A stretch of DNA of 64,000 nucleotides from positions 28,334,001 through 28,398,000 of the forward strand of contig NC_073398.1 of NCBI RefSeq assembly GCF_028641065.1, given 5' to 3'. The stretch is from Leucoraja erinacea. Taxonomy: Eukaryota. The position numbers and the translations under genes were made by a program. Below are positions 488 through 63,795 of this stretch, piece after piece (positions within the stretch are counted from its first letter, which is position 1; every line of letters begins with the position of its first letter). Below the pieces are notes generated by a model that had not been told where the DNA came from, did not search any database, and was given only the letters and a program-made list of their open reading frames with translations.

Positions 488-655
488 CTGTATGTCAGTG
501 AATAATATATTGCAGTATCTTGTTATTTAACAGCAACATCACCAAATCCAACAATAGTACACATCAAACACTTAAATTGTTTTGATCCTGGAATCATGAG
601 AGACCAACATGACTTCTGCCATGGTGCATGGACTGCCACGTTTTACCTTCCTTAC

Positions 656-831
656 CTCGAAATAAGAAAGTTTTGGTTCAAAGACTTCCTTTGACGGTGG
701 AACATCTTTATGTCCTGTATAAGCCAAGGCGAGCACTGCATATCCTCTGGATGCAAGTAGAGCTGCTCGGTATTCCATTAGACCTCCTCCACCACCCCAC
801 ATGTCCAGGATTGCAGGAAATGGTCCAGGGC
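656..831 (-). CDS. ACOT-family coding exon 4
   Basis: GPGPFPAILDMWGGGGGLMEYRAALLASRGYAVLALAY, a hallmark ACOT/BAAT segment. 176 nt, phase 1 to 0. Confidence 0.95.
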
Positions 832-992
832 CTAATAAATACATCAGGATATGCAGTTCTGAAATGCAGCCAACAGACTGTTTGAACATAGAACAATATG
901 TACAGCATCTTAATCATGATGTCTGCACTGTGAAAAACATCCATTTATATAGCACCTAAAGACCCATTAAGGTGGAATATATGTGCATATAC

Positions 993-3612: not shown

Positions 3613-4392
3613 TGAAATTAATTGAATCAAACACACCTTACTAATCCTTCTCCAACCTCCCTTTCCTATTTTAAAGATACATTGGGTATGCAAGCAAATA
3701 ATTTAATTGTGCCTAGTCACATGTGACAATAAAGTATTATATTCCAAGATCGGAATGCTCAGAACAATCTTGCTCGAGGAACAAACTTTTACTGGATTTT
3801 CAATGAAAAGGGTAAAGGGTAAAATGCAAAATAGTCAGTTAGTGCATCAACACTATTTCAGAGGTCAAAAAATTGAGCCAATACACCTGTGTCTCCCTAA
3901 ATAGGTTGAAACTTAAACTTTACTTGCGAGAACAAGTATATCATCTGAATCATTAGTGAGAATAAATTGCATCCTCCAAGATGTTGCCACGTTGAGGGAT
4001 CATTATTTGCCTCTTTCTATGGCAGGGTCTTAGGGTTCGCCAACCTAGATTTTTTGCTAGGCTGCATCATCAACAGAAACATTTTGGGCAAAAAATTCAA
4101 AAATCTGAACACACGATCTTGCTATACAAGAACTGTTTGATGTATTTTCCTAAATATCCTTCAATGTAATTCACTGAATTCAAGCCATATTGGTATACCT
4201 GTACATGAATACATACTAAACTACATAACATCATATTTTTCTGTATTTTCATGGTATGGAATCAGGTAGGGACAAAAAAGAAAATGACATAGTTTGAGAA
4301 TAATTGCAGTAAATTCCAAGAGGAACACGAGGTGAAAGGAAATAAAGACAAAGGATGGAATATTATCACTCTGCAGCATTGCATTCCATTAC

Positions 4393-4583
4393 CTGGTGGA
4401 AAGAATAGTGTTCCAACGACACGGCCCTCTTTGAACTCTAACCTGGTGGCGCCTGGGGCCATATAAAAGCGTTCTAATACAACTGATGCCAGAACTACAG
4501 CCTTGTCAAAATTACTGGAAATCCAACCATAATAAACTGAAACAGTTACTGTAAGTGGGGTGGTCATATTCTTCTTCCTTAAC
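4393..4583 (-). CDS. ACOT-family coding exon 3
   Basis: [18 protein letters not shown]...[29 protein letters not shown]. 191 nt, phase 2 to 1, AG/GT flanks. Confidence 0.93.
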
Positions 4584-5316
4584 CTAAAAGGTAAATTGGC
4601 AAATTTAAGACATAAAAACCTGTATCTGAACATCAAAGGTTTAAAAATGGGAAAAGGGCTAGTGGGGAATTGTATAAACTTATTCTTTTGCCGTTCCTTA
4701 AAGTAGGAACATATCCTGTGGATAAAAAGGAACTAGAGATACTATATAGTATATTTGCATTCGAAGAAGGCATTTGATAATGCATTTGATAATCCAGTTA
4801 TTACAACAACAAAAACTGATGGTCTCGGAGAAAACACATAGGCACAGATAGATGATTCAAGAAAGAACTGCAGATGCTAGATGATTGTTTGGCTCATAGA
4901 AAAAAGAACGCAAGATTAATAGGCCTTTTTCAGATTGGCAAAATGCAACAAATGGGTACAGTTGATAATTTTAAAGGGTCACAACGGGCACATAAGTTGT
5001 GAAGAGTACTCAGGGATGCTGCAAAGATATACAGTGCCCTCCATAATGTTTGGGACAAAGACCCATCATTTATTTATTTGCCTCTGTACTCCACAATTTG
5101 AGATTTGTAATAGAAAAAAAATTACATGTGGTTAAAGTGCACATTGTCAGATTTTATTAAAGGCCATTTTTATACATTTTGGTTTCACCATGTAGAAATT
5201 ACAGCTGTGTTTATACAGGCCCCTCCCATTTCAGGGCACCATAATGTTTGGGACACATGGCTTCATAGGTGTTTGTAATTGCTCAGGTGTGTTTAATTAC
5301 CTCCTTAATGCGGATA

Positions 5317-25819: not shown

Positions 25820-25868
25820 ATGGAGACATCATTTTACATTATCCTACAGCTGTTAATACCTTTTGCAG
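25820..25868 (+). CDS. VJ-C1 inhibitory IgSF receptor, exon 1 (signal peptide)
   Basis: ATG in a good Kozak context (GACATGG), METSFYIILQLLIPFA, phase-1 donor G|GTATGA typical of IgSF leader exons. Confidence 0.75.
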
Positions 25869-27207
25869 GTATGAGACCCAAGTGTAATACTTTATACAGA
25901 ATTTGATTTCACCAAGCAAATGGAGATTGCTGATGTTGGAACCTAGAATTGAAAAAAGAGTACTGAAAGAACTTGGTGATCAAGGCAAAAAGTGTAAGTC
26001 ATTATTTCATGATGAAATTCTAAATCAGTCCTGATCAGGGGCTCGAACCAAAACATTGACCTACACTTTTTCATAGTCATACGGCGTGGAAACAGGCCCT
26101 TTGGCCCAATTTGCTCACGCTGACTGCATTTGTCCCAACTACCTGCATTTGGCCCATATATTCTTCTAAACCTATCCTATTCACGTACCTGTCCAAATGT
26201 TATTTTTTAATATTGTGAAAGTACCATTTTTTTTGCCTTCACAAATGCTGTTTGATCCACTGATTTCTTCCAACGTTGTGTTCTTTAATTTTATCAAATT
26301 TGGATAGGCATTAAGTTCATATTATATGTTGTCAATTGCATGGAATGTAACAGTCAAAGTGAATGATAGCAAAATTGATGTGATTCTACTTTTGTTAGTG
26401 CATTTTGTGTTGAATTTACTTGATGAAATTGAAATGGGTTAGCAACACTGAATGTTTGCTATTACTTTATTTTCAAACCATCTTGAACATTCACAATTGT
26501 GTTTTTTTATTTTCCTAAGTTGAAATGACTAATATATATTGACACTTTTAAATTTCATGATATAGCATGCCACAGCCATTTGAGCTTTTAAACTTAAAGA
26601 GCATTAATTTAAACTTTCCAAAACTTTCATTGTAATTCAGAAATGTGGTATTCCATGTAAGCCTATGATCCCCTGGTGTTGAGACCCTTTGTGCATTTAT
26701 CCTTTGTATACCTCATTGTTCTTATGTTGCTTGTTTTGTTCATTTGTTTCAATCTGGTGATATTTTGTTAAAATACCATAATAGTCTCAGTTCATAAAAT
26801 GGCTACAGCTGGCATTATTTTCCATTCCATGCCTTATTGTGTTGTTACATGGTACCTAATGGATTTATTTTGGGAAGTATTGTTCTTGCAGCAGAGATAG
26901 AATATATCTTGAAAGCAATTCTGTTCTATGGTATTTGAATGTTTAAAATTCCTCTGTTTACATTTTTAAAACATGCAGGAGCAGTGTTAAAATTGTACTC
27001 CAAATACAGCTGCAAATGTACTAATATGAAGTGTTAAGCTATGAAGTTTCTCTACAAACAAAGAAATGTAATGTGTTGACCACTCATATGGCAATCGCAG
27101 AGGAGGTTCAAACAAGCACAGTTACATTTATTACAATTATTACCGCGGGGAAGATTAACTTTGAAATACGGCATTTTAATTACATTTTCTGAATCTCTTT
27201 TTCTCAG

Positions 27208-27567
27208 CTGTACACAAGACAAATAATGATTTACAACAACCTGATACCCTTACCATCGCAAAAGGACATTCGATCTCATTACATTGTTCCTATTCCATGC
27301 ATTATCTATCAAGATTTACAGTAAAGTGGTTTTTATGCAATGATAGCCCATATTCTTCAACGATAATCGCAAACCTATCTACCGATAAACCTTGGGTTTC
27401 TCATTCTCGATATTGCGTAAGGCATAATTCTACATTGAAGGCATTCATCTTAACAATTATCGATGTTCAAGTCAGTGACAATGGAATCTACTGCTGTGAG
27501 GTGATTCGGTTGGCACCACCGCCAACTTTAACAGGCAATGGAAATGGCACCCTACTGAATGTAACTG
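27208..27567 (+). CDS. VJ-C1 receptor, exon 2: VJ-type IgV domain
   Basis: LQQPDTLTIAKGHSISLHCSYS...VKWF...LTIIDVQVSDNGIYCCEVIRLAPPPTLTGNGNGTLLNVT: canonical C, W, DxGxYxC and a J-like GxG G-strand. 360 nt, phase 1/1. Confidence 0.92.
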
Positions 27568-28376
27568 GTAATTATTTTTTTAATTCTTTAAAAAGTGTTT
27601 TGGCAGTTTTACTTGGAACATTAATGCAAACTTTTGCAGCAATTAACTTTGTACAGTTGTGTCAGTTATATGAGAGATGTGTCAGATATGATCATCGCAC
27701 GGCAGTGAGTTAGCTCTAAATCAGCATGCTGGCTGAAGTTCTTAATTTGTCCTTAGTGGTCTGGAATAGGAAGGTTTAGGACACATATTTTTGGCAGGTT
27801 GGACCTGCTTTTGAGATAACAAATAAAAACAGGAAACACTGGATATAATGGAACAGGCAGAGCCTGCAGAAAAGGAAACAGAATAAATATTTCATATCTT
27901 TCTCCTTTTGTCAGAACAAGGAAATATTTGAAATTACTTTTTGTGTCTGTTTGTGTGAAAATTGAAGGTAGCATGATTTATCAATTTCAATGATAACTAT
28001 CTATACTTCCAAATGATATTTATCTTATTAAGGACTTTATTTTATTCATAGCTTTCACTGTTGTGAGAAATAAAGGAAGTTTAACTTAATTTTCATCAAA
28101 AGGCACAAATATAGGACTAACATCAGTCATGCTTGTTCTTACAGCAGTAGAGTGGTCTGAATTAGACATGAGGCCAAATGGACAGTGTAGTTGTGCTTGA
28201 TTTAGATTGACAGTGAGATCATTTCAAGTTAATTTATCAGCAAAGAGAGGAAGCACAGTAGAATCGGGCATAGTCAAGGCTTATAGCCAAATCAGACCAG
28301 AATCCTAATTTATGATGCTGTTATACTAGAGACAGGAATTTAATTGACATAATGAACACATCATGGTTACAAAATA

Positions 28377-28550
28377 GACACAAAAAGCTGGAGTAACTCA
28401 GCAGGACAGGCAGCATCTTTGGCGCGAAGGAATGGGTGATGTTTCGGGACAAGACCCTACTTCTTGACCCGAAATGTCACACATTCCTTCTCTATAGAGA
28501 AACTGCCTGTCCCGCTGAGTTACTCCAGTTTTTTATGTTTATCTTCGGTT
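28377..28550. repeat. Palindromic Penelope-pLTR-derived repeat
   Basis: GCTGGAGTAACTCAGC...GCTGAGTTACTCCAG inverted arms. Similar fold-backs occur at about 40760-40920, 45975-46110 and 62913-63100. Confidence 0.75.
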
Positions 28551-29759
28551 TAAACCAGCATCTGTAGTTCTTTAACAGAATGGTAACAAAATATTTTGCT
28601 TTAAATTTACAGCACAGCGGAGACCTTTTGTCCTTTGTATAAAAGCTATGTTTTATTCGTGCTGTACATTTTGCACATACCATCATGGTTGACAAGTATC
28701 GGATTTTGTTGCATTTTGCTACCGAATGTATAAATTGTGTCAATATTTAATTGGTACTTTATTGTCTCAATTATGGTATGTGCTTAATGGTCAATTCTCT
28801 ACTGCTTATGGATCAGCTTTGAAGAAACAGAAGAGAAAATAGAATCTTTATGAATGTCAATTTTCCTGATTAAGATCTACAAAAATCCAACTGGCTCATT
28901 TATGACAAGAAAAAATGAAAGTAGATTTGCATCTATTGAAGGCTGCAGCAAACACATCTACCTTGAAGATAAACAAATAAGTAACTTTAATTCAGTTCTT
29001 CTCTGATTAACCATTAGAATGGATTGAAAATGATAACTAGACTGTTGTATTAAATGACACTCTTATGTGGAGTGAGGAAGCATTTAGGATTTGGTTGTTG
29101 GTTGTAGTATTGTGTGAGAACATAGTGGTTAACTTCAATTGACATCGATGGAAGAGGAAATTTGAAAAGGCTGATACAACCAAAGCAAGAGGCCAAGAAT
29201 GATCGTGGAACAGCATAGTCAACATGATCAAGACCCACAGTCAGAGAAGGCCAATTAAAATAAGTGAATGAGTAAAACAAAAAAGAAGCACATTACTATA
29301 CACATATGTCTGAAGAAGGGTCTCGACCTGAAACGTCATCCATTCTTTCTCTTCAGAGATGCTGCCTGTCCCGCTGAGTTACTCCAACATTTTGTGTCTA
29401 CATAGTATTCGAGTTAGGTTGGAAATGCGTGAAAGTGGCTAGTTATATGTCTGTCCTTACAGGATTGGAACAATAGTGGGAATAGGATGGTTGGGATGGG
29501 GATGAATGCTTTAGAATGAGGAAATAAGAGCAAAACATTTTGTATAATTATAGAGCTTCATATATATTTGTAGATTAAGCAAACAGAAAATATTCAGGTG
29601 TTCAGTTCTGCATAGAAAAATCATAACTGATTTCAAGAAATGTATATTTATAATTAGTACTGTTTATGTAATTAAATATGAACCTCAGTACCTTTGTAAT
29701 TTGGATACCTTTGAAGAATGATATGCCACTTCAGAATTATACCATTGCTAATCTAACGA

Positions 29760-30360
29760 AAGCATGATCATGTTTCACACCTTTTGGCCTCTCTCCACTG
29801 GCTGCCTATTCAGTATAGGATTCGTTTTAAAATTATTTTATTTACTTTTAAATCCCTAAGTGGTCTTGCCCCGTCCTACCTATCTGAGCTTCTTCACCCT
29901 TATTCGCCCTCCCGCTCTCTCAGGTCAGATGATCAGCTGCTCCTGATTGAGCCAAAGACTAAGCGGAAGCTCAGAGGGGACCGTGCCTTTGCTGTGTCGG
30001 CTCCGAGATTGTGGAATGAATTGCCTCTGCACGTTAAACAGGCCCCTTCTCTAGCTGTTTTTAAGTCACTCCTGAAGACATATCTGTTCTCCATGGCCTT
30101 TGTAGACCAGTGAGGTGTTAAATTGTTTATTAACTTTATTTGCTTGGTTTTGCTGCGTTGTTCGTACTCGTGTTTTATGTTTTTTAATTTATTGTTTGGA
30201 TTTTTGTATGTAATTTATGCGCCTCGTGTTAGTTGTATGTTCTGTTGTTCTGCCTGTTTTATGATGTCTTGCTTGTTTTCTTTTTTCTGTACAGCACTTT
30301 GGTCAGCTTTGGTTGTTTTTAAGGTGCTTAACAAATAAAGTTGTTATTATTATTATTATT
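29760..30360 (+). mobile_element. L2 LINE 3' end in intron 2 of the VJ-C1 receptor
   Basis: LASLHWLPIQYRIRFKI...GLAPSYLSELL...LRS.D...GDRAFAV.APRLWNELP...FKS.LKTYLF, then the 3' UTR TGTACAGCACTTTGG...AATAAAG and a (TTA)n tail. Confidence 0.93.
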
Positions 30361-30384
30361 AATCTATCTTTTTTTTATTACCAG

Positions 30385-30699
30385 CTTGTCCTTCTTTTCG
30401 GCTCATGGAATCTTACGACAAGATTTCTTCTTCACCATCAATTATCATTACATGCTTAGCATATGGGTTTTATCCAAATATTATTACATTTTGGATACAA
30501 CCAACCTGTCTCACCTACAGGCTCATCAGTACAAGCAACTCAACCAATCCCAATGGAACCTATAACTACAATGCAACGTTTAGCATCTCCACAGAAAATT
30601 GCTCCAACTCCACTGAATTCATGTGTGTAGTTCAACATCCAGCATCACAGACCGAGCTAAATGTTACTATCATCATAGATGTTCATACAGTTGCTCAAG
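30385..30699 (+). CDS. VJ-C1 receptor, exon 3: C1-set Ig domain
   Basis: ITCLAYGFYPNIITFW...NPNGTY...FMCVVQHPA shows the C1-set signatures CxxxGFYP, NxxGTY and FxCxVxH. 315 nt, phase 1/1. Confidence 0.92.
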
Positions 30700-32199
30700 G
30701 TAGGATGGTATCATAAAATTAATTCAGCAGGAAGGCCAACAAAGCCCCTGCTGGAATGTGTTGTAAAATAAATGCTTTACTAGATATAAAGAAAGTGTGA
30801 TAGAAATAAAGAAGGCCAAATTTACTTTTTTTAAATCAAATCAAACTCACTTTATAATATTACCTTATTAACAGGCACACCTTATTTTTCTGGCTAGCTA
30901 ATTGTTGTTTCCCACTTGAATTACTTCCTTGACATACAATCTCTGCTCTTCCTGATTTATGACACCCTCAAAGGAGGCACAGTTTTATTTCCTGATATCA
31001 ACAAAATGATATCAAGAAATAATGTTGTGCCTCCTTTGTGGAAATTAACAAAAATGTATAATTATGTGATTGTAATCAGAATAAGAGTTCACACGCTAGA
31101 TTCCTGGTGAAGAACCATGCATACTGGGGAAAGAAATGTTTAAAGCAAAGCCGCCAGACTTCTGGAGTTTAACATTCAATTCTGGAAATTAACAGGTTAA
31201 CATTCCGGCTGCTGCAAGCTGAAGAATTAAGAGAAAGCTTATCAGTGCTCTCTATCCGATGTAGAATTCTTAACCCAAAAACCTTCATTACGATAAACTA
31301 CATGTAAACACTGTGACTGCGAAATACTGCCATGAGTGTCCTTTGTTTAGGTAGGATCTGATGCCCTGTGTGAGCTGCTTTGCCTGTGGCTGCTTAGGGC
31401 TCCATGCCAACAAATTTATACATGTTGGGTTCCTTTCAGGCCAGAGCTGGAAATAGTCATGTTATTTCCTGATTTGCCGTCCACTTTTATTGAAGGGAAG
31501 TCACCGTTGCCTTCCAGCAGATCACATATTTGTTCTTGCTAGAGACAAGCAAGTGGATTGAGCACACACATTTGGAATGGTTGTTGTCTTCTCAATGCTG
31601 CTGAATGTCATTGACGCACCCATGCTGCATTGCAGGATTCACATATCAACACAGGGATGTACCACAACTGGTATAAAATTTATTCCCTTAATAGCCAGTG
31701 CATGCACAAGCATACCCAGTATTCTGGCAGCAGTATAAACACCTATATTCTTTGGTGATGCACTGTGTTTCAGTGCTTGAGCATCAGCAATAAACATAAA
31801 ATTGGCAAGTGGAAACAAGGACATTAAGCTGAACATATGATGCCGCAACACATGGATAGTATGCATATTATGAATATCATGCCGGCATATACAGTCTGAT
31901 GGAAAAGACAGTCATAGCATCACATGGCCACCAATGGATTCGGGGATGACAAGGCCCTTCATTTCTGCCATATAGGTAGCTCCTCACTTACCAGAACCTT
32001 CTCAAATGGCTCAATCATACCATATTAGCAGAATTTTTGTGATAAACTAGATTAAGTGGGACCCGTTGGCTCCCTGTCACACGGATGCAACCGGTTCCCC
32101 AACACAATAGTCCACTCACCCGTTCCCCCAATGCAACCTGTCCCCCCAACTCAATATTGCACCACTCATGCATAGCCCTCAACTGCGCAGGCACGGCTC

Positions 32200-32660
32200 A
32201 TTTCCCCTCATCCCCCAGCACTCCCTCCCCCTCTTCACCCTCCCTCTTCTTTCCTTTCTCCTCCCCAATCCCTCCCTCACCTCTCCCTCCATCTACTTTC
32301 CCCTACCCTCAGTCACTCCCTCCCTCCACAACTCCTCTCCCCTCCCTACCCCCCTCCTATCCCTCTATCCCCCACTCCTCACCTCCCCTATTCCCCCCAC
32401 TATCCTTCCTGACCTCCCCCACTGTCCTCGTCTGCCTCTATTCCCCACTCCCTGCCTCTCCCCCCCCCCTCATCTCCCTCTATTCCCCCCCTCTCCTTAC
32501 CTCCCCCACTTTCCCCCTCTCCCTCACTACCCTTTCCTCTCCCTCAATCCCCCCACTCTCCCTCCTCATCTCCCCAGGATCTTTCCCCTCTCCTCCTCCC
32601 CTCCCCAATCCCTCCCTCTCCTTTCCCTTACCCTCAGTCACTCCCTCGCTCCATCCATAA
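32200..32660 (+). repeat. Polypyrimidine (C/T-rich) low-complexity tract
   Basis: About 460 nt of CCCT/CTCC/CCCA runs. Confidence 0.9.
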
Positions 32661-34049
32661 AGAGCAGCATCTACAGTTCTCTCCTCCACAGGTCATCCAT
32701 TGTTAGATGTGGTTTAGATCCAGTTGACATGACGATTGGACCAGTTTGCATCGTGTGTGTGAGTTACTCAAACTCCGCGCAAACTGCTCAGCCACTCTGC
32801 AACCCGACTCTAGTAGAAGCAATGTGACACACCACTCTGAGAGCTCAGGAAATTTCCTTTCTACTTTCAGCTTAATTCACTTGGCAACATTCTAATTCAA
32901 GTCTGAAGTTTAAACTCCATTAATGGCATATAAACATTATCCCGGAAAACATTCCATCCATACATGATCTGGTGTACATCATGCTGTTGTTTTCCAGACA
33001 TTGTTGAGTATGAATCAGCCACGATATTTACCTTTGTTACAATTCAAGACATTTATTTTAGTTTTTGTTTAGTTTATTATCACATTTACAGAAAAACATT
33101 TGTTGCGTGCTATTCAGTCAGCAGAAAGACAATACATTATTACATTCGAGCCATTTACAGTGTATAGATAGATATATGATAAGAGAATAATGTTTAGTGC
33201 AAGGTAAAGCCACCAATACCCGTTCAAGGATAGTCTGAGAGTCATCGAAGAGGTGTATATCTATATATATATATAGATATACACTTATTCTAATTACGTT
33301 AAACTTTTTTATTAGAAATTTTTTATTAGAAATTTTAATTAGAAATTACATATATATATAGATATAATTTCTAATTAAAAAGTAAAACATGTCATTAGAA
33401 TAAGGATCCAAAAGCTGGGTTTGATTCTAAACTAAATTGAGGAATTACAAAACTTTGTCACTTTACATGACCTAAAAATTGTGCAAACATTTTCCACACA
33501 CATTTCCATTTCCTCTATTCATAAAAAAACATGTTTTGTGGTTTTTGGTGTTGTGCTATTTCTAAAGGTCAGCAAATAGATCTTTTAGTTCAGTTTATGT
33601 ATGACCAGGTCTAATCCAGTCAAATAACTTTGTGCATTGTTATTTTTAAAGAAAATGAAAAGCATAAACCCCGATCTGGAAGGTGAATATACTGATGAAA
33701 TAATTCAAATATGTTAAAGCATTTAAAAATAAATTAACTAAGAATTAGTGAAATCAAATAACTTTATGTAATCAAAATTAAAGATATCACTATAAAATAA
33801 TTTCATAAACTAACAGCAAGAAAGAAAAGGACTTAAATGAACATAACAATTGAAAATAGTTATAGAAAATGGAAAACCTGAGCACAACATTTGAATGGAG
33901 AGGTGGATTGATTTTTAAATGTGGTGGAAGTTATAAATAAAAAGCCTTCAAATGTTTGGTCCCAAGTTCAGATCAGATTAGTTTATTATCATCTCCAAGA
34001 GGGTGGTCCTTGTTTATTGTTCATATGAAGCTCACAGTGTATCAGTAAA

Positions 34050-35010
34050 CATACACTAATGATAAATACAACAATATGACGACGAGAGTAAAACAGCAGA
34101 ATTGTACACGATTGTCATGCAAAATCCATGTAATGTAAAAGAATATTAAAATACAAAAATAGAATAATCAATGAGATAGAGCATCTCTGGAAATGGGGTG
34201 TAAAAGAGATGATTGTTTCAGGAGTCAGTTAGCAATGGGGAAAGTGGCTCTTAATTCTGGACATCTGGGCTTTCACGCTCCTGTATCCTCTCACAGAAGG
34301 TAGAAGGGGGAAAAAGGAATGGCCGGGACAGCAGGTACACTTGACAATACTTCCAGCCTACCTGATGCAATGCACCATGAGGGTGGACTGTATGGAAGGA
34401 AGAGACAAGCCTGTGATGGACTGGAGATACAGGTAAACAAAATAACCATTGCAGGTCAGGGTGAGTGAGTCTGAAGAAGGGTCCCGATCTGAAACAGAGC
34501 CTACCCATCTTCTCCAAAGATGCTGCCTGACCTGCTGAGTTACAGTACTCCAGCATTTTGTGTCCTGTGATGGACTGTTTTGTGTTCAGTACTCTCTGCA
34601 GGTTCAGATGGTCAAGAACAGAGCAGATCCCATACCATTCTGAGATGCACCCTTCACAATGCATCCGGTAGTGCATCTATAGAAGTTTAAGAAAATCCTC
34701 ATGAAAAAGACATGTTGAATCTTCTCAGGCACATAAGAGAGTAAATGTATTGATGAGCTTTCCTGATCACTGCATTAGTGTCAAAGGACCAGGTTAGGTT
34801 GTTGCTGATACAGATACAAAGAAACATTAAGCTGTCGACCGTCTTCACAGCCGCTCAGTTAATGAGGACAGGGTTGGGTTCATCCCCTCGCCAGCCCTAT
34901 TTCCTTAGGTCAACGATCAACTTTGGTAACAGTCCTGGGACTAGATAATGGAATCGCCAAATGAGGAAGAGTTAAGAACCTCTGTGAAGGTTTTGTGTAG
35001 GTGGTGCTCA
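34050..35010 (-). mobile_element. Degraded Rex1-like LINE
   Basis: GCISEWYG.CS..D...LQRV on the minus strand. Confidence 0.6.
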
Positions 35011-36064
35011 TCTCCGCTGCACAACCTCAACCATAAATAGACTTACCCTGAAACTGTAACTTGTCATCAGCGATAGAGATATTTTGGGAGAGCTGTTTTC
35101 AGAAAGATGATTTCCGCAATCTTTCAGAGAACCATTCAGATCCACGTCTTTGTCAGATGGACTTTGCTTTTTACAAAACTGTACGCCCTTGCTTTGCTGA
35201 ATGAGGTAATCTGCTAACCCATTCTTGTTAATGTTATATTATAAAGCAGAAAAGATCAATCATTAACATGCCATCCTGATCATTGCCAGTTGGACCGTGA
35301 AAGCTCAGACATAAGGACTTAATAACAACAACTTTCCCATTGCTATCCAACTCCTGAACTAATCATCTCATTTCACACCCCTTTCCCCAGAGGTGCTGCC
35401 ATGTAATCTTATTCTTAACTCTATCTCACTCGGTTTTCCACTTTTACACTTTTTTGTACTATTTTCTGATTGTACTATAATCTTTACACCATTCTCATGT
35501 TTTGCATTTGCCACTGCATTTATTGTTCATGTATTTATTGTTTACTCTATGAGCTTCATGCAAACTAAGAATTTCAGTGTCCTGCTGGAGTCTATAACAA
35601 TAATCTAATCTGTATTTTCATTATTTTGAACAACAAATGAAGCCTCACTCTTTGAGAACTTTTCCCAGGATCTTCATTGGCTTTTCAGGCCCAATGGGTT
35701 TTTACAAGTTGAAATCAAACTCCAGTTTTTATCAAATTCAAATGGGGTGAAATGGCATTATTAACTGGCCAAGCCAAAATATTCTGATTGATAACTTAAA
35801 TTATATTTGTACAGAACTTTGTACATTTATACAAAAGGAAAACGGCTTTGAGACGACGCAAACTATAAATTATTATTAATACTGCAATTATACTTTGGTA
35901 ATGATTAATTGGAAGAGAAAAGAAAGTGTAAAGTGCAGGGAAATTAATAGTTGTAAAAAGTTTCTATAAATAAAATGATTAAATGTATTGAACTTGAAAT
36001 CGTTCTGGAGAGTTGTTTAAATCGACCATGCATAACGTGATTTAACAATTCCAATTTTCCACAG

Positions 36065-36163
36065 ATCATAAATGGAGTACCTGGATTTCCATTTTACTTT
36101 CCATAAGTGGAGGAACAGCTTGCCTTTTCCCTCTTGTGCTCTTCCTTATAAAATGTGCATGCA
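36065..36163 (+). CDS. VJ-C1 receptor, exon 4: transmembrane
   Basis: DHKWSTWISILLSISGGTACLFPLVLFLIKCAC. 99 nt, phase 1/1, CAG acceptor and GTAAGT donor. Confidence 0.85.
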
Positions 36164-36635
36164 GTAAGTGACTTCACAGCCAACTTTCCCAAAAGCAAAC
36201 AATCCAGTTTTAGGTGTGATCCTGATTCTGTACAGTGATTCTCCCTTCATTAATTCCGTGTTTGCATCTATTGTCCCACTTTTTAAAATTGACATAATAA
36301 TATGAAGTAAATTATTAGATATGTCTACTTTTGAAGCTACATAATATATTCCTAACATGACATAAGATATCTAGTATTATGTTGATTCACATGCTTGATC
36401 AATGGTGTTTTATCATTAATGTTTTATTATTATTGTTTAGTGTTTTTTGAGTCGTTCGTAACTGTCAATGTATGTCATGTTGTTACTTGAGGGCAGAGCA
36501 CGAAGGTAAATTCCTTGTGTGAATACTTGACCAGTAAACCTACTTACTTACTTACTTACTTACTTACTTATAATATAGTTCACTTTACTACAGACTTTAA
36601 AACTAATTATTCCACTTCATTATTATTTCTCATAG

Positions 36636-36706
36636 AAAGGAAAGGAATGCAAGAGCAAACAAGAATTCAAAGTAATCGAACTTTGAACCTTGAATGGAAT
36701 AACATG
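36636..36706 (+). CDS. VJ-C1 receptor, exon 5: cytoplasmic
   Basis: KRKGMQEQTRIQSNRTLNLEWNNM, starting with a basic stop-transfer cluster. Phase 1 to 0. Confidence 0.78.
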
Positions 36707-36799
36707 GTAAATATTTGATTTTTTTTTAAAGATAATGTATATTTAGTCTTCTTTGGTTACTTATTCAACGCAAATGTTGGACTGTCTGTCCCTTCTCAG

Positions 36800-36844
36800 A
36801 ATTCTCTGGGATTTCCACATAAACAGACCAAGAGAAGCAGGCTT
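36800..36844 (+). CDS. VJ-C1 receptor, exon 6: cytoplasmic
   Basis: NSLGFPHKQTKRSRL. 45 nt, phase 0/0, CCTTCTCAG acceptor and GTGAGT donor. Confidence 0.72.
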
Positions 36845-37704
36845 GTGAGTTTGAATGTATGTATGACAATGTTTAATAGCCTGATGTGGACCTTGGATAC
36901 TCCTGCAAAGTTTTAATTGCAATTACAAAATCAAGCAAACAGCTAATTAGAAATAGAAACATAGAAACATAGAAAATCGGTGCAGGAGGAGGCCATTCAG
37001 CCCTTCGAGCCAGCACCGCCATTCATTGTGATCATGGCTGATTGTCCCCAATCAATAACCCGTGCCTGCTACTAGTAGGCTAGTCCTGATACTATGTATC
37101 ACATGGTGAGGAAACAGTAATTAAATGAGTGATCCTATGGATTTTTTGGTAAATAGTGTAACAATAATAAATGAAACAAAACTAGGTGATTCATCAATGG
37201 TAATGCCATTAAATGTCAAGGGTAGGTGGTTACTGTCACACTTGTTGGATATGGTCAGTGCAAATGGTTAATTTCGCTTGAAGTGGCAAACGATTGTTGG
37301 GCATAGCACATTGCCTGGAGGAACCCCTGATGAGATATCTGATGACTGGTATAAGTGATCAGCAGCAAAGTACCATTTTGCTTTCTTTGAAGTATGATTG
37401 CATATTGGAGTGCTTTCTCCTTGATGCCCATTGACTTTTGACTGGCCAAGGATCTAGAATATCGTACCTGGCCATCTGCAAAGTCAATCTTCTCACCTCT
37501 GAAAGGTGATGAGGACAGGAGCTGTGAAAATCTGGCAAAACCTAAACTGGACATCAGTGAACCATTTATTAGAAAGTCAGTGCAGCTTCACTGGCGCTTC
37601 TCAATGCTTTGTTGATGACTGAGACTAAGATGACTGAGAACATGCTGAGTGGTTGGCACATTAAACCATTAGAAGTTAATGCACTGTGTTTTGCTATTTT
37701 GTAG

Positions 37705-37848
37705 AATGAAACCAATGAGGAAGAGATCTGCTATGCCAAACTGCAATGGGCAATGACACGGAGAGCTAGAAAGGAGGAGGAGGAGGAGGAGACTGTGTAC
37801 AGCCCGGTTCTTCAGTGGAAGACTAATGGAGAGGGCAGCTGCAAATAA
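37705..37848 (+). CDS. VJ-C1 receptor, exon 7: ITIM + ITSM, stop
   Basis: NETNEEEICYAKLQW...EEEEEETVYSPVLQW...CK*. ICYAKL fits ITIM and TVYSPV fits ITSM. TAA at 37846-37848. Confidence 0.85.
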   Translation, partial: NETNEEEICYAKLQWAMTRRARKEEEEEETVYSPVLQWKTNGEGSCK

Positions 37849-37865
37849 TGAAACCATTCAATACA

Positions 37866-37885
37866 AATAAACGTGCTTGAATAAA
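37866..37885 (+). terminator. Candidate polyadenylation signals of the VJ-C1 receptor
   Basis: Two AATAAA hexamers (37866, 37880) just after the stop codon, followed by T/GT-rich sequence. Confidence 0.55.
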
Positions 37886-51274: not shown

Positions 51275-51622
51275 CTGAAGGATCTTTCTCTCGATCCTTT
51301 GGGATGTTGAATAGAGACATCCTGTTGCCCTGCGCCTTCCATGCTTCATCTAATTTCAATCTGAAAAATCTCATCATCACATGGCAGCGGACAGGCAGTC
51401 TCGCCGTGGTTTACAGTTTCTATTCTGGAACAATCCATCCGGAGCATCAGGACAAAGCATTCCTGGACCGCACTCAACTATTTCTCTCCGAATTCACCAA
51501 AGGGAATGCGAGCCTGAAATTGGAAAGAATGTTGTTATCTGATGTGGGAAACTACAGTTGTTTTGTAACTGTAGATGATGGAATGCCACACATTGAGAAC
51601 GTGGTGGAACTAAAATTAAATG
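51275..51622 (+). CDS. IgV-TM-NACHT-LRR receptor, B7/butyrophilin-family IgV exon
   Basis: DILLPCAF...LIITWQR...VVYSFYSG...QDKAFLDRTQLFLSEFTKGNASLKL...DVGNYSCFV carries B7-H3/B7-H4/HHLA2/BTN-type motifs. 348 nt, phase 1/1. Confidence 0.93.
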
Positions 51623-51689
51623 GTGAGTGCATCTTGTGACAGATAGATCGATGTTTTGTTGTGTACATTTCATAGAATTGTAAAGCACA

Positions 51690-58997: not shown

Positions 58998-60187
58998 TAT
59001 TGTATATAGTTTCTGCCCACAATAGTAGAAGTGGTCTCCTTGTCCACTACTGGAATCTGCCATGGAATTAATCTTCAGAAGGGTGTGAAATAATTGTTTT
59101 TAGAATGTGGTCGTTGAATGAATAAAATAATTGAATATGAATTTTGAAAGAAAGAACATACAAAATATATATAAAATCCAGACCTGTTTGAGCAAAGTAT
59201 CTTAACAAGAAATTAATTTTATTCTTTTCAGGAAGCCCATCCAGTCTCACAGCTCATTCAGCAGCTTGACCTTTTAAGCCACATCAGGCTAGAATGGCAG
59301 ATAACTGAAATTATTGATGCAGATGGAATTTGACGGCAGTCTTGTCACTTCCTCATCACCTTTACTGAGATTGTTTGAATCTTCAATTCCACAGCTGCTG
59401 TGGTGGGATTTAGGCTGATGTCACTTGATCAATGGTCCAAGCCTGTAGATATTAATCACTATGCCAGCATACTCCACTGCTTGCCCTACTCCTCTCTGTA
59501 CAGCCTCATAGTGAACCTTGACACCATTGGTTCAATCAGTGTCCCTCACCCCTTGGTCTGGTGTAATCATACAGTGACCAACGTAGAGTCCCACCAGTAT
59601 GTCCTGAATGGTACCGTAGTGTTGGGTGCAAGGATAGTCCCTTGTTTCTCACTCCGTTTTGCTGCCCTCCAAATCATGGATCCATTCTACAATGGAGTTG
59701 CATGCTGGAAGATTATAATCTAGCCATTGAGTATTATTTGGCAGGAGCATCGTCATTCTGCATCATCCCCAAGCACCCAGGAATCCAAGGTTCACCTTCA
59801 AACTGTATCAGATTTTATTATGTGAAATATTTTCATAATGTGGATATTTTGAACTGTGTAACAAAGTGCCAACCAAAAGCTGGTGTAGATGATGAATGGA
59901 AAATCTGCAAGATTTTAATACCTGTGTCAGCAGGGCATACTGACCAACAGTTGGCAAATGGAATAGTATAGGTGGTTACTTGATGTTTGGCATGGACAAG
60001 GTGGGCTGAAGGGGCTGTTTCTGTGCTGCATAACTCTGACAACTTAAACCTGAAGCGATGTGGGAATTCTTAAAGGGGATCAGCAACTTGATGGATATCT
60101 GATGCTCACAGTTCTCACATTTTGTTAATCCATGATAATAAAATACTTGCTCGTTCTGAGAAATGTGTTTTTTTTTCTTTTCTTCAG

Positions 60188-61892
60188 ATGCCATTCTGAA
60201 TTATAAAGAGTACATCTTGAAAGATAAAATGCATTTATGTTGTTCATTAACACAACGGCGATTCGAAAACTATCCGCTTGCCAGAACCATCAATATTACC
60301 AACCCGAAGGAACAAGACCTAGATGGTGATCTTATCAGGAGCGATGACTCAAATATTGCACAAGAAGTACAAATTTCACAACTGCTGTCATTGCTTCGGG
60401 AAGAAAACTTCTCAAAGCGAGTCCTGCTGGTAGGTGATGCAGGAGTAGGGAAGAGTTGGACTGTTGTCAGCATGGAGCAAGAGTGGGCATCTCAACCAAC
60501 CCACCCCTTGAGGTGCGTCTTTGTTCTCAGATTCCGTGACTTGAATGAGGTTAAAGGAAAGACATCTCTCCGGGATCTGCTGAAGAAGCATTGCACACCT
60601 TTGTCATCAGTCCTAACAGAACTCCTCTCGAACCCTCAAGATGTGTTGATCATTTTGGACGGGCTGGATGAATTCGCCCATCAGTTGCAATGGAATCCAT
60701 CAGGTTGTGATTTCAACCTGGATAGTGAGGCTGAAGTAGGTGTTCTTGTTTCCAAACTAATATCCAAGAACCTCCTTCGAGAAGCCCAGGTGTTGGTTAC
60801 CTCCCGGTGGAATACCAAGCAGATAGAATTTAACAAGAAGTACTTTGATCAGCTTTTTGTTATCTCTGGCTTTACCAATGATCAGCTGAAAAGATATTGC
60901 GAGGTGTTTTGTGGAGAGAAGCAAAAGGCGGAAGAAATGTTTCAACGCATTACAGAGAATGCAACCATCAAATGTCTGGCTTCCAATCCCCTCAACAGCT
61001 TCATTCTGTGCAATATTTTGGACAAGTGTACCAGCTCTCAAGCAAATGTACCAGTGACAAATAGCAAAGTGTTTACATTGTTGCTGTACAGTCTGTGTAA
61101 CTGCAGCACGAGTAAAGAAACAGACGCTGAGAATAAGAGTGAAGAGGAGAAGCAATTGTTTAAAGACACCATCCTGAAACTGGGAGAACTATCCTTCAAC
61201 TCTCTGCTATCAGGGAAACTTAAAATAAATGTGACTGATCTGAAGACCTATGGAATAGATCCAGACATCCTTTCAAAATATCTCTCAAATCTTGTGCTGG
61301 ACTGTAAATGCCAAGGAGTCTTTGAGTTCCACCATGCAGTGCTGAAGGAACAATTTGCAGCTTTGTATTGTGCTACTTTACTCAACAATGAAGCTGAAGA
61401 GTTGGTCAAGTGTCTGGATCTGTGGTGCTTTGGGAAAATGCCACTAAATCAAATGAGCCAATTTTATTTGCAATCTTTTCAACCTGACCACACAGAGAAA
61501 CTGTACAATTTTCTGAGGTTTCTCACTGGCTTCTTAACCGCAGGAAGAGATGGCAAGTTGTGGAACTATACAACTCCTCTCCCTCCTTCTACAGCCATAG
61601 CTCTCACAACATGGTTCAAAAACAGCTTTCAGCGAGACATTAAGAAGGCAGAATTGCTGAATTTGATGCACTGTCTCTTTGAACTGAATGATGCCACTGT
61701 AACGGCAGAAGTATCTCCTTGCATCCGAGATGTGGGTTTTCACAACGTTTCTCTGAGCCCGCTCGATCTGCGTGCTTTGTGCTACTGTCTCAATCATTCC
61801 ACCGTGGAGGAGATGGATTTGAGGCACTGTAGCATTGGTGATAAAGGAATAAAGCAGCTCCAAGAAATACTAGTCAAGTGCAGAACTCTTTT
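60188..61892 (+). CDS. NLR (NLRC3-like) NACHT exon with HD1/WH/HD2 and first LRRs
   Basis: Walker A GDAGVGKS (60433-60456), Walker B LIILDGLDE (60646-60672), sensor-1 VLVTSR, FEFHHAVLKEQFAALY, FLRFLTG, LNLMHCLFEL, then MDLRHCSIGDKGIKQL. Acceptor TTTTCTTCAG (phase 1), donor TT|GTGAGT (phase 2). Confidence 0.96.
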
Positions 61893-63795
61893 GTGAGTAA
61901 TGATTTTCAAAAGAATATTAAGCTCCAGTTGCACTAATCTACCTTCTTGCATGCACAATGTTTGTTGACATGTTTTATACTTTTGTCACATTTTATGCCC
62001 TACATGTCCTGATTTATTCTAGCCCAGCTAATATTTGTGCCTGAAAGTTGTAATGAAATATATACAAATGGAGATACTACTCTTCAAGACTAGAATGGAA
62101 ACAATGTGTGCAATTATCTCCCTCAACTACATTGTTCTATGGTAACCCCACCCTCCTCCAATGTTGCCCTGTGGAGCTGCGATGAATCACAGAGCTGCAT
62201 TGTAATAACCACAAGGGCAGAGATTTAATTCTATGCATTCATTCTAGTTGTTGCTCTTATGAACACACTTGCATTGATCACTATAAAAAGACTTGGGGGC
62301 GGTTTGCTTTATCTGCAAATACACCTGTTGGGGGTTTGACCTTTCTGTAAATCTTGCCCCACCCCATTTCCAACGCAGCAGTGTCAATGGACAGGTATTC
62401 ATAAATCTAGAGGAACAGCATCTCCTATCTCACCTGGGTGGTCTACAACCTAATGGTATGAACATCAAATTCATGTAACCCCTCTGTCTATTTGTTGTCT
62501 CATGATACACCTAGATTATCTGTATGTCACTGTATGTCATGTTGTTACTTGTGGGTGGAGCACCTAGGCTAATTCCTTGTATGTGAATACTTGGCCAATA
62601 AACTTACTAACTTACTTACTTGTCTCATATGCCCCTTCTTTTCAAACCCAACCCCTCTTTCAGTTTCTGTAATCACCCTACCCCATCCCAAATGATTCCA
62701 TCTGTGTATCACTTGCACATTACACCCACTTGATTTCCCAATTCCCTCCACTGTTCCCCTTTTGCCCACTATCCCACCCTAATGTGGTTCCACTCACCAT
62801 TATCCTTTCTTATCAGATTCTATAATCTACCCATGTACCCATGTACCCATTATCACCTCCTCAGCTTCAGGTTCATCTCAGCATTCCTCATCTGGGCCCA
62901 CCTATTACTTAAGGACACAAAGTGCTGGGGCAACTCAGCGGGTCAGGCATCATCTTTGGAGAACACGGATCACTGACGTTTCAGTTCGGGACCCCACTAC
63001 AGACTGATCATTAGTTTGAAGAAGAATCCTGATATGAAACATAATCTATTACGTTCTCCAGAGATGCTGCCTGGCCTGCTGAGTTACTACAGCATTTTGT
63101 GTTCTTTTGTGTAAATCGGCATCTACAGTTCCTTGTTTCCTCTTTTACTGTACCACTCTACTGCTTTTTTTTAAATTGCTGCTTTTTTCCCTTTTTCCTT
63201 CCGCCCACAATATCTAAAAGAATATGTGATTCTGTTCCATTCTGTTTGTAGTTTGTTTGTTTGTTTGTCTTTTTGCACAAAGTCCGCGAGCATTGCCACT
63301 TTCCATTTCACTGCACATCTCGTATGTGTATGTGACGAATAAACTTGACTTGACTTGACTTTATGCTCTAAATCCTCGACCGCAAACATCGACTGTCTGT
63401 CTGCCGCCACCGATGCTGCTTAACCCGCTGAGTTCCTCCACTAGTTCGTTTTTGCTCCAGATTCCTGCGTTTGCTGTCTCTTGTATATCCAAATATCCAA
63501 ACATTGATTATTATCAACAAGGTTGAATTGATTTTGTGTATTAGAAAGTGCTCAAGCAGAAACAAAGGATCTCTTAAACTATGTAATTACCTGAAGTCAT
63601 TTTAAGCCCCATTTGCACTATCGTTCAAAAATCATTGCCCAGACACATGTGTTAGACCAAGGTTAGACTCTGCTCTCCCAGCAGTGCCACAATTGTTTAT
63701 TTTGCAGCTACCTTTGCAGGCAGCAGTTTGTGAGGATTGTGTTCTGTCCCCAGGCACTCGGGTCTCTAATTGTTTTCAACGTCTTGTGTTTCCAG

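What the first reader, a model, noticed from the sequence alone, without database searches (positions are those of the whole stretch)
25820..37848. Non-rearranging VJ-C1 receptor with a CD28/CTLA-4-like PPP loop and a PD-1-like ITIM+ITSM tail
Seen: a complete 360-aa model. The V exon ends YCCEVIRLAPPPTLTGNGNGTLLNVT, followed by a true C1-set exon, an uncharged TM, ICYAKL (ITIM) and TVYSPV (ITSM). Established: CD28/CTLA-4 bind B7 through a MYPPPY FG loop followed by (G)NGT but have a single V domain. C1 domains are mostly limited to Ig/TCR, MHC, tapasin, SIRP and some B7/BTN members. ITIM followed by ITSM recruits SHP-1/2, as in PD-1. Inference: a mosaic inhibitory receptor resembling the proposed pre-RAG germline-joined VJ-C1 ancestor of antigen receptors, with no obvious mammalian orthologue.
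Basis: partly seen in the sequence, partly recalled or inferred. Interest (0 to 1): 0.8.

Follow-up and report, generated by a model that had tools for sequence, protein, structure and literature searches.

The report
Skate VJ-C1 inhibitory immune receptor gene
The little skate carries an intact six-exon gene for a cell-surface receptor built like one antibody or T-cell-receptor chain with its V and J parts already joined, ending in two inhibitory tyrosine motifs; it belongs to an old, unnamed family kept from sharks to crocodilians and not seen in birds or mammals.

Summary
On the + strand at 25820-37848 there are six exons with canonical splice sites: signal peptide, single-exon V(J) domain, C1-set domain, uncharged transmembrane segment, and two cytoplasmic exons carrying ICYAKL and TVYSPV.

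Contigs of a probable RNA run from a related species cover only the V and C1 exons and stop matching exactly at both splice donors.

The gene is not skate-specific. Relatives occur in sharks, rays, a chimaera, gar, axolotl, turtles and alligator, and their tree mirrors the species tree. RefSeq names them automatically "SIRP-alpha-like", "Ig kappa-like" or "uncharacterized". None appears in the 2024 CD28-family census, whose members all have a single V domain.

The V domain carries the census's CTLA-4-type signature (YxCx6PPPx5GxG). Overall it is as close to TCR V-alpha/delta and SIRP-alpha as to CTLA-4. Only the skate and one shark have a canonical ITSM; the conserved feature is two tyrosine motifs 19-23 residues apart.

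Most likely it is an SHP-1/2-recruiting inhibitory receptor with an unknown ligand. A B7-H3/B7-H4-like V exon of a membrane NLR gene lies about 13 kb downstream. The scan found sister V-C1 receptors beside B7-like genes elsewhere in this genome.

The parts
25820..25868 (+). Exon 1: start codon and signal peptide (aa 1-17), donor G|gtatga, phase 1
   Evidence: Sequence read; aligns with the N-terminus of the Narcine orthologue P0153; frame check
27208..27567 (+). Exon 2: complete V(J) domain in one exon (aa 17-137), phase 1 at both ends. It holds YCC at 27489, the APPPT FG loop at 27513-27527 and the J-like GNGNGTLLNV starting at 27534
   Evidence: Pfam V-set E 9.6e-15. Best PDB sequence match is CTLA-4, E 2e-6. 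AF2 model pLDDT 90. Foldseek finds TCR V-alpha/delta and CTLA-4 at TM 0.77-0.81. A contig of run X1 stops matching at 27567. No RSS heptamer
30385..30699 (+). Exon 3: C1-set Ig domain (aa 137-242) with a family-specific second cysteine pair (QPTC and ENC) in addition to the canonical pair
   Evidence: Pfam C1-set E 4e-7, above cut-off. PDB matches: IgM C domains, UrIg2, CD276 IgC. Seven-strand domain in the AF2 model of the orthologue. The four cysteine columns are invariant or nearly so in 13 species. A contig of run X1 stops matching at 30699
36065..36163 (+). Exon 4: short stalk and uncharged transmembrane segment, followed by a KCAC membrane-proximal cysteine motif (aa 242-275)
   Evidence: 75% identical to Narcine P0153 by tblastn; sequence and splice sites
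36636..36706 (+). Exon 5: cytoplasmic spacer (aa 275-298)
   Evidence: Best-scoring candidate exon of the right phase; aligns to Narcine, Hemitrygon and catshark tails
37705..37848 (+). Exon 6: cytoplasmic end with ITIM ICYAKL (37726-37743), ITSM TVYSPV (37792-37809) and stop (37846-37848). AATAAA signals follow at 37866-37871 and 37880-37885
   Evidence: Motif search; sequence; both tyrosines are invariant and 19-23 residues apart in 12 species
51304..51639 (+). Context, not part of the gene: B7-H3/B7-H4-like IgV exon of the downstream IgV-TM-NACHT-LRR gene, same strand, about 13 kb beyond the stop codon
   Evidence: PDB phmmer: CD276 E 9e-29 and VTCN1 E 1.3e-13; Pfam V-set, and NACHT at 60163-61896; earlier finding s1-878062

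Best explanation
This is an intact gene for a type I membrane receptor of the immunoglobulin superfamily. Its parts, in order, are: signal peptide, germline-joined VJ domain, one C1-set domain, an uncharged transmembrane helix, and a tail with two tyrosine motifs about 20 residues apart (ITIM ICYAKL, ITSM/ITIM TVYSPV). It is the skate orthologue of an old, unnamed gnathostome gene family found in sharks, rays, a chimaera, gar, salamander, turtles and crocodilians. The proposed mechanism is inferred, not shown. The V domain binds a still unknown surface ligand through its CDR-like face, including the conserved xPPPx FG loop and the GxG bulge. After Src-kinase phosphorylation the paired tyrosines recruit the tandem SH2 domains of SHP-1/SHP-2 and dampen activation of the cell that carries it, as in PD-1 and SIRP-alpha.
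For: - Gene structure and open frame.
- Domain identities.
- Confident AF2 models of both Ig domains.
- Exon-only coverage in run X1 from a related species, with contigs that stop matching exactly at the two donors and run on for 9 and 119 letters unlike the introns.
- Orthologues with the same V-C1-TM-YxxL...YSxV layout in 12 or more species.
- A family clade with 97/94 support whose branching follows the species tree.
- Invariant tyrosines with 19-23 residue spacing, and an uncharged membrane segment.
- SHP recruitment by ITIM/ITSM pairs is established knowledge for PD-1 and SIRP-alpha; PD-1's ITIM/ITSM is summarised in PMC11599192.
Against: - No RNA run of the little skate itself holds the V exon.
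- The membrane and tail exons have no read evidence.
- No ligand, expressing cell type or phosphatase binding is known for any member.
- Most orthologues lack the T of a canonical ITSM.
- Predicted isoforms in other species skip the C1 and/or TM exon (P0056, P0002, P0152).
- The PPP loop lacks the tyrosines needed for B7-1/2 binding by CTLA-4.
Confidence: 0.7

Rival explanations
1. It is simply the cartilaginous-fish member of the SIRP family (SIRP-alpha-like), with one C1 domain instead of two and CD47 or a CD47-like protein as ligand.
For: - RefSeq names several members 'tyrosine-protein phosphatase non-receptor type substrate 1-like'.
- The family profile scores SIRP-alpha second among solved structures. 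Its V domain scores 50 bits, with a similar V-to-C1 junction, and its third (C1-set) domain scores 45 bits.
- SIRP-alpha also has VJ-C1 domains and ITIM pairs about 24 residues apart (my own knowledge).
Against: - With the skate V exon alone, no SIRP chain is among the 60 best PDB matches, while CTLA-4, TCR and PD-1 are.
- Fab and TCR chains score as well as SIRP over V-C1.
- The family has one C1 with an extra conserved cysteine pair, two rather than four tail tyrosines, and a conserved PPP loop that SIRP lacks.
- No bird or mammal member was found, although SIRPs exist there.
Confidence: 0.15
2. It is a tenth, two-domain member of the CD28/CTLA-4 family, an ancestral V-C1 form that other members reduced to V only. 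It binds a B7-family ligand.
For: - Exact match to the census signature YxCx6PPPx4/5GxG (PMC11599192; sequence).
- CTLA-4 is the best PDB sequence match for the V exon.
- The protein-language-model search gives a PD-1 family cluster as nearest neighbour.
- A B7-H3-like V exon lies next door.
- The scan found sister V-C1 genes beside B7-like genes in this genome.
Against: - The census defines the family by a single V domain, and none of this family's accessions occur in its text or supplements.
- There is no YxxxxT motif in the membrane segment and no stalk cysteine.
- The CTLA-4 margin over TCR-delta is 1 bit, and Foldseek ranks 48 TCR chains before CTLA-4.
- No CD28-locus marker gene is in the window.
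Confidence: 0.25
3. [quoted passage not shown] 2019, J Immunol 202:1992), non-rearranging VJ genes described from chicken.
For: PRARP is listed with SIRP, NKp30, CD8 and others as a joined-VJ gene (PMC11599192) and as a VJ gene in the MHC (PMC10751288). This family reaches turtles and crocodilians.
Against: - PMC10751288 contrasts the 'VJ genes' NKp30 and PRARP with UrIg as a novel VJ-C1 gene. I take this to mean, as my inference, that PRARP has no C1.
- A search from the alligator member found a tortoise relative but no bird protein.
Confidence: 0.07

Closest known systems
CTLA-4 / CD28 family (nine members in Quiniou et al. 2024, PMC11599192), especially CD28X and CTLA-4 for the V signature, and PD-1 and CD28HL3 for the tail
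   Same: VJ-type V domain with YxCx6PPPx5GxG and an NGT site in the G strand. CTLA-4 is the best solved sequence match for the V exon. The tail has ITIM followed by an ITSM-like motif, as in PD-1 and CD28HL3. Phase-1 exon borders.
   Different: It has an extra C1-set domain between V and membrane. It lacks MYPPPY-type flanking tyrosines, a stalk cysteine and a YxxxxT membrane motif. The genomic neighbours differ. It is absent from the published census.
SIRP-alpha (SHPS-1)
   Same: Non-rearranging VJ domain followed by C1-set domain(s), an uncharged membrane segment, and paired ITIM-type tyrosines that recruit SHP-1/2. It is the source of RefSeq's automatic name for several members.
   Different: SIRP-alpha has two C1 domains and four tyrosines, no PPP loop and no extra C1 cysteine pair. 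SIRPs are present in mammals and birds, where this family was not found.
UrIg / UrIg2 (Flajnik et al. 2023, 2025; PMC12227049)
   Same: Non-rearranging single-exon VJ followed by C1 in cartilaginous fish. UrIg2 is the top solved match of the family profile.
   Different: UrIg and UrIg2 have a VJ domain followed by three C domains. UrIg is described as secreted only, and both are reported as restricted to elasmobranchs. This gene has one C1, a membrane anchor and an inhibitory tail, and reaches bony vertebrates.
Ig light chain / TCR chains
   Same: V-C1 two-domain fold. Foldseek's best matches are Fab and TCR chains for V-C1 and TCR V-alpha/delta for V. It has a J-like GxGTxLxV strand.
   Different: V and J are one germline exon with no recombination signal. 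There is one gene, not an array, and its tail carries tyrosine signalling motifs that Ig light chains and TCR chains lack.
CD28H-like V-C1 receptors found earlier by this scan in the same genome (s1-877461, s1-877457, s1-876305)
   Same: PPP-loop VJ domain on a C1 domain plus a membrane anchor, lying next to a B7-type gene.
   Different: It is a different gene on other DNA. The likely counterparts in my hit list (P0063, P0136) fall outside this family's clade, have a canonical C1 without the extra cysteine pair, and have a different tail.

Membership tests
CD28/CTLA-4 family (as defined in PMC11599192) | Single extracellular IgSF V domain | tested here: not met
   A C1-set exon lies between the V and TM exons, and this layout is conserved in the orthologues
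CD28/CTLA-4 family (as defined in PMC11599192) | FG-loop signature YxCx6PPPx4/5GxG (CTLA-4/CD28X type) | tested here: met
   The skate has YCC-EVIRLA-PPP-TLTGN-GNG. The same pattern occurs in all family members, and P120/P122 are invariant
CD28/CTLA-4 family (as defined in PMC11599192) | Conserved synteny (CD28/CTLA4/ICOS cluster or the marker sets given for the other members) | tested here: not met
   Within the 64 kb window, the only other genes recognised are an ACOT/BAAT-like gene (0.5-6 kb, minus strand) and an IgV-TM-NACHT gene. The window is short, so this is weak evidence
CD28/CTLA-4 family (as defined in PMC11599192) | YxxxxT dimerisation motif in the TM / stalk cysteine | tested here: not met
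   The TM has no tyrosine, and no stalk cysteine is conserved across species
SIRP family | V domain followed by two C1-set domains | tested here: not met
   Only one C1 exon is present
SIRP family | Closest sequence relatives are SIRPs | tested here: inconclusive
   SIRP-alpha ranks second for the family profile but is absent from the 60 best matches of the skate V exon. No tree with SIRP references could be built
PD-1-type inhibitory tail | ITIM (I/V/L/S)xYxx(L/V/I) followed by ITSM TxYxx(V/I) | tested here: met
   The skate has ICYAKL and TVYSPV, 22 residues apart. In orthologues the second motif is mostly [IV]VYSxV
PD-1-type inhibitory tail | Phosphotyrosine-dependent SHP-1/SHP-2 binding | not testable with these tools
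   Needs peptide pull-down or cell assays
Rearranging antigen receptors (Ig/TCR) | Separate V and J segments with recombination signal sequences | tested here: not met
   One uninterrupted exon runs from the A strand to the G strand, and there is no CACAGTG/CACTGTG within it or its flanks
UrIg/UrIg2 | VJ followed by three C domains; elasmobranch-only | tested here: not met
   It has one C1, a TM and a signalling tail, and has orthologues in gar, axolotl, turtles and alligator
PRARP | Orthology to chicken PRARP1/2 | not tested
   Paper and sequences are not held. No bird relative was found from the alligator member
C1-set Ig domain | Passes the Pfam C1-set threshold; seven-strand ABED/CFG topology | tested here: met
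   30.7 bits against a cut-off of 21, and 6 of the 7 scanned relatives also pass (gar P0052 scores 20.8, just under 21). The AF2 model of the orthologue has seven strands

The most novel reading that the evidence does not exclude
The receptor and the gene 13 kb downstream form a co-inherited receptor-ligand pair. The PPP-loop VJ-C1 inhibitory receptor would recognise the B7-H3/B7-H4-like IgV ectodomain of the membrane-anchored NLR. The lead is suggestive only. Both genes are reported from the same unusual set of lineages (sharks, gar, amphibians, alligators). The scan has met CD28-like V(-C1) genes beside B7-like genes at three other places in this genome.
Probability: 0.1. Interest if true: 0.85.

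Novelty: new variant of a known kind. Interest (0 to 1): 0.6.

Why it matters
Comparative immunologists look for non-rearranging VJ-C1 genes as living relatives of the gene that the RAG transposon split. The published candidates, UrIg and UrIg2, are described as confined to elasmobranchs.

Here is a membrane-bound VJ-C1 gene with an inhibitory tail that has been kept for over 400 million years in cartilaginous and bony vertebrates up to crocodilians. It carries the FG-loop signature used to define the CD28/CTLA-4 family, whose recent census assumes a single V domain.

If the family is confirmed, three things follow:
- It widens the set of checkpoint-like receptors in non-mammals.
- It offers a possible intermediate between antigen-receptor chains and CD28-type co-receptors.
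- It corrects misleading automatic names ('Ig kappa light chain-like', 'SIRP-alpha-like', 'CEACAM1-like').

Tried and rejected
rejected. A 113-nt version of exon 5 fits the phase, but the orthologues support only 36636-36706.
- **My own first exon ends:** they were off by one base at four borders and gave internal stops. This was corrected and agrees with the contig ends at 27567 and 30699.
- **Pseudogene:** rejected. The frame is open, all splice sites are canonical, and a probable RNA run covers the exons only.
- **UrIg/UrIg2 membership:** rejected on architecture and taxon range.
- **NITR, MDIR and teleost families:** considered from memory and not pursued, because the family has no teleost member among the hits.
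- **Word-index protein searches:** these found only close relatives.
- **Literature:** no paper in the held library names the family's accessions or a VJ-C1 ITIM receptor of this kind. The searches for PRARP and for SIRP evolution gave nothing usable.
- **Reference tree:** a tree against named CD28, SIRP, PRARP and Ig/TCR sequences could not be built, because no such sequences were available by id and I did not type any from memory.
- **Whole V-C1 Foldseek search:** saturated with Fab chains and does not discriminate.

Full report
**What is in the sequence**

The genome is the little skate, according to the scan's own index. The V exon is one open frame from a polypyrimidine/AG acceptor at 27207 to a donor after 27567. 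It encodes the whole domain, from the A strand to the J-like G strand GNGNGTLLNV.

Pfam calls this exon V-set (E 9.6e-15). It calls the next exon C1-set (E 4e-7, 30.7 bits against a 21-bit cut-off). The CD80-like C2-set_2 model falls just below its own cut-off. No recombination-signal heptamer lies in or around the V exon.

**Gene model**

RefSeq models of relatives from the electric ray Narcine bancroftii (P0153, 331 aa) and the catshark Scyliorhinus canicula (P0151, 344 aa) were laid on the window by tblastn. They find six exons in order, at 54-75% (Narcine) and 44-52% (catshark) identity.

My first coordinates were off by one base at four borders. After correction, the exons are 25820-25868, 27208-27567, 30385-30699, 36065-36163, 36636-36706 and 37705-37848. 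Every border is AG/GT. The sum is 1038 nt with a single terminal stop, giving 345 aa.

The membrane segment has no charged residue, and two AATAAA signals follow the stop.

The joined model was assembled only inside scripts, for the frame check and the tree. Searches and folds used single exons by reference or database proteins by id.

**Transcription**

No run on record as RNA holds the V exon.
- Run X2 is DNA of the same species, with even depth over the introns.
- Run X1, guessed to be RNA and from a related species, covers only the V and C1 exons apart from repeats.
- One X1 contig matches 27321-27567 and runs on for 9 letters that do not match the intron. Another matches 30467-30699 and runs on for 119 letters unlike the intron.
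- Both break points are the predicted donors, which is what spliced mRNA looks like.
- The letters beyond the breaks were not shown. The V-to-C1 and C1-to-TM joins are therefore implied, not read, and the membrane and tail exons have no read evidence.

**Relatives**

An exhaustive HMMER search with the V exon against 1.84 billion representative proteins, followed by cluster look-ups and word searches, gave the following.

| Lineage | Species with relatives |
|---|---|
| Sharks (full-length) | Scyliorhinus canicula and S. torazame, Rhincodon, Chiloscyllium, Heterodontus, Pristiophorus, Heptranchias; shorter models: Stegostoma, Mustelus |
| Rays | Narcine (full-length); Hemitrygon (isoform without C1 and TM) |
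| Chimaera | Callorhinchus (V-domain model only) |
| Ray-finned fish | spotted gar, XP_015207742 |
| Amphibian | axolotl, XP_069483861 |
| Turtles | Gopherus, Pelusios |
| Crocodilian | alligator, XP_059581528 |

Six of the seven relatives scanned pass Pfam's V-set and C1-set cut-offs; the gar C1 scores 20.8 bits, just under the 21-bit cut-off. RefSeq's automatic names are 'SIRP-alpha-like', 'immunoglobulin kappa light chain-like', 'CEACAM1-like' or 'uncharacterized'.

Residues shared by all 13 aligned species are:
- the canonical V cysteines and tryptophan;
- the two outer prolines of the PPP loop, with the middle one nearly invariant;
- T-L-V of the J-like strand;
- FYP in the C1 domain;
- four C1 cysteine columns, invariant or nearly so: the canonical pair plus a second pair (QPTC and ENC in the skate).

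The second pair suggests an extra disulfide, but this was not verified in coordinates.

A maximum-likelihood tree gives the family 97/94 support against three outgroup sets from the same hit list: a CD28H-like V-C1 pair, V-V proteins and an NKp30-like protein. Inside the clade the order follows the species tree. Batoids, sharks and the chimaera are on one side; gar, then axolotl, then alligator plus tortoise are on the other.

This is the pattern of one old orthologous gene. No teleost, frog, bird or mammal member appeared among the 150 best hits, and a search from the alligator protein found no bird protein. That is consistent with loss but does not prove it.

**What the domains resemble**

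- By sequence, the skate V exon's best solved match is CTLA-4 (31.1 bits, E 2e-6). The alignment runs through the PPP loop and the GNGT strand. TCR-delta (30.1 bits), antibody light chains and PD-1 follow closely.
- The AF2 model of the skate V exon is confident (pLDDT 90). Foldseek ranks TCR V-alpha/delta chains first (TM 0.77-0.81). CTLA-4 comes at rank 49 with TM 0.77 and the same 24% identity.
- A protein-language-model search gives a PD-1 family cluster as the nearest neighbour. This is a lead only.
- The C1 exon matches IgM constant domains, UrIg2 and the IgC of CD276.
- The family profile over V-C1 scores UrIg2, SIRP-alpha and Fab/TCR chains in the same range.
- The AF2 model of the Narcine orthologue has two confident Ig domains, and its C domain has seven strands. 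It superposes on Fab and gamma-delta TCR chains.

The ectodomain is therefore a generic antigen-receptor-like VJ-C1 unit. Its one specific CD28/CTLA-4 trait is the FG-loop signature YxCx6PPPx5GxG, the motif Quiniou et al. use for CTLA-4 and CD28X (PMC11599192). The tyrosines flanking PPP in MYPPPY are absent.

**The tail**

The skate has ICYAKL and TVYSPV, 22 residues apart. In the 12 members with tails, both tyrosines are invariant and the spacing is 19-23 residues.

The first motif is always an ITIM. The second is T-x-Y only in the skate and the bamboo shark, and is otherwise mostly [IV]VYSxV; gar has VLYSTV and axolotl TEYSVL.

This is an ITIM plus ITIM/ITSM pair, as in PD-1 and SIRP-alpha, combined with an uncharged membrane segment. 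Recruitment of SHP-1/SHP-2 is the natural inference, but it is not shown.

**Comparison with the literature**

- The 2024 census of the CD28 family lists nine members, each with a single V domain. It does not contain this family's accessions in its text or supplements.
- UrIg and UrIg2 are non-rearranging VJ genes followed by three C domains. UrIg is described as secreted only, and both are reported only from elasmobranchs (PMC12227049).
- PRARP (Fu et al. 2019) is cited as a joined-VJ gene. The paper is not held, so PRARP membership stays untested. The wording of PMC10751288 contrasts it with the VJ-C1 gene UrIg, which I read as meaning that PRARP lacks a C1.
- No held paper names these proteins.

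**Surroundings**

An ACOT/BAAT-like gene lies on the minus strand at about 0.5-6 kb (recognised by eye, no Pfam hit). About 13 kb downstream, on the same strand, a gene begins whose IgV exon (51304-51639) matches CD276/B7-H3 (E 9e-29) and VTCN1/B7-H4 (E 1.3e-13). A NACHT exon follows it.

An earlier finding of this scan describes that gene as a membrane-anchored NLR conserved in sharks, gar, lungfish, amphibians and alligators. That range is strikingly like the range I find for the receptor. The scan has also noted CD28-like V(-C1) genes beside B7-like genes elsewhere in this genome.

A linked receptor-ligand pair is therefore a reading worth testing.

**Verdict**

The gene is a non-rearranging VJ-C1 inhibitory receptor without a visible mammalian counterpart. 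It is one member of a widespread, automatically annotated but undescribed family.
- Its CD28/CTLA-4 likeness rests mainly on one loop motif.
- Its relation to the antigen-receptor ancestor is architectural only.

Noticed in passing
window 29755-30371: A repeat insertion in intron 2 (the tail of a retroelement ORF at 29784-30113 plus an AT-rich microsatellite). It is absent from a related species: one DNA contig of run X6 joins 29754 to 30372 directly (record 22). The insertion is therefore young and specific to this lineage.
   Followed up: partly
window 51304-51639 and 60163-61896: The downstream gene's IgV exon is clearly B7-H3/B7-H4-like (CD276 E 9e-29, VTCN1 E 1.3e-13) and is followed by a NACHT exon. 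It shares strand and neighbourhood with the receptor.
   Followed up: partly
window 572-889 and 4262-4636, minus strand; CpG-rich 5.3-6.1 kb: Two ORF pieces look like an acyl-CoA thioesterase / BAAT-type gene, with a GC-rich putative promoter. They were recognised by eye only; Pfam gave no hit for the first piece.
   Followed up: no
axolotl proteins P0016 (XP_069483859) and P0064 (XP_069483861): The axolotl has a second family member with a duplicated V-C1-V-C1 ectodomain, an arginine at the start of its membrane segment and no tyrosine motifs. Its accession number is two away from that of the inhibitory form. This may be an activating or decoy partner.
   Followed up: no
catshark P0152, Hemitrygon P0002, axolotl P0056: Predicted isoforms skip the TM exon (catshark), both the C1 and TM exons (stingray), or the C1 exon (axolotl). 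If real, soluble forms and V-only forms of the receptor exist beside the full-length one.
   Followed up: no
window 32085-32830: A C/T-rich low-complexity block with 43-bp tandem units lies in intron 3. It gives long spurious proline/serine-rich ORFs and a strong negative GC skew.
   Followed up: no
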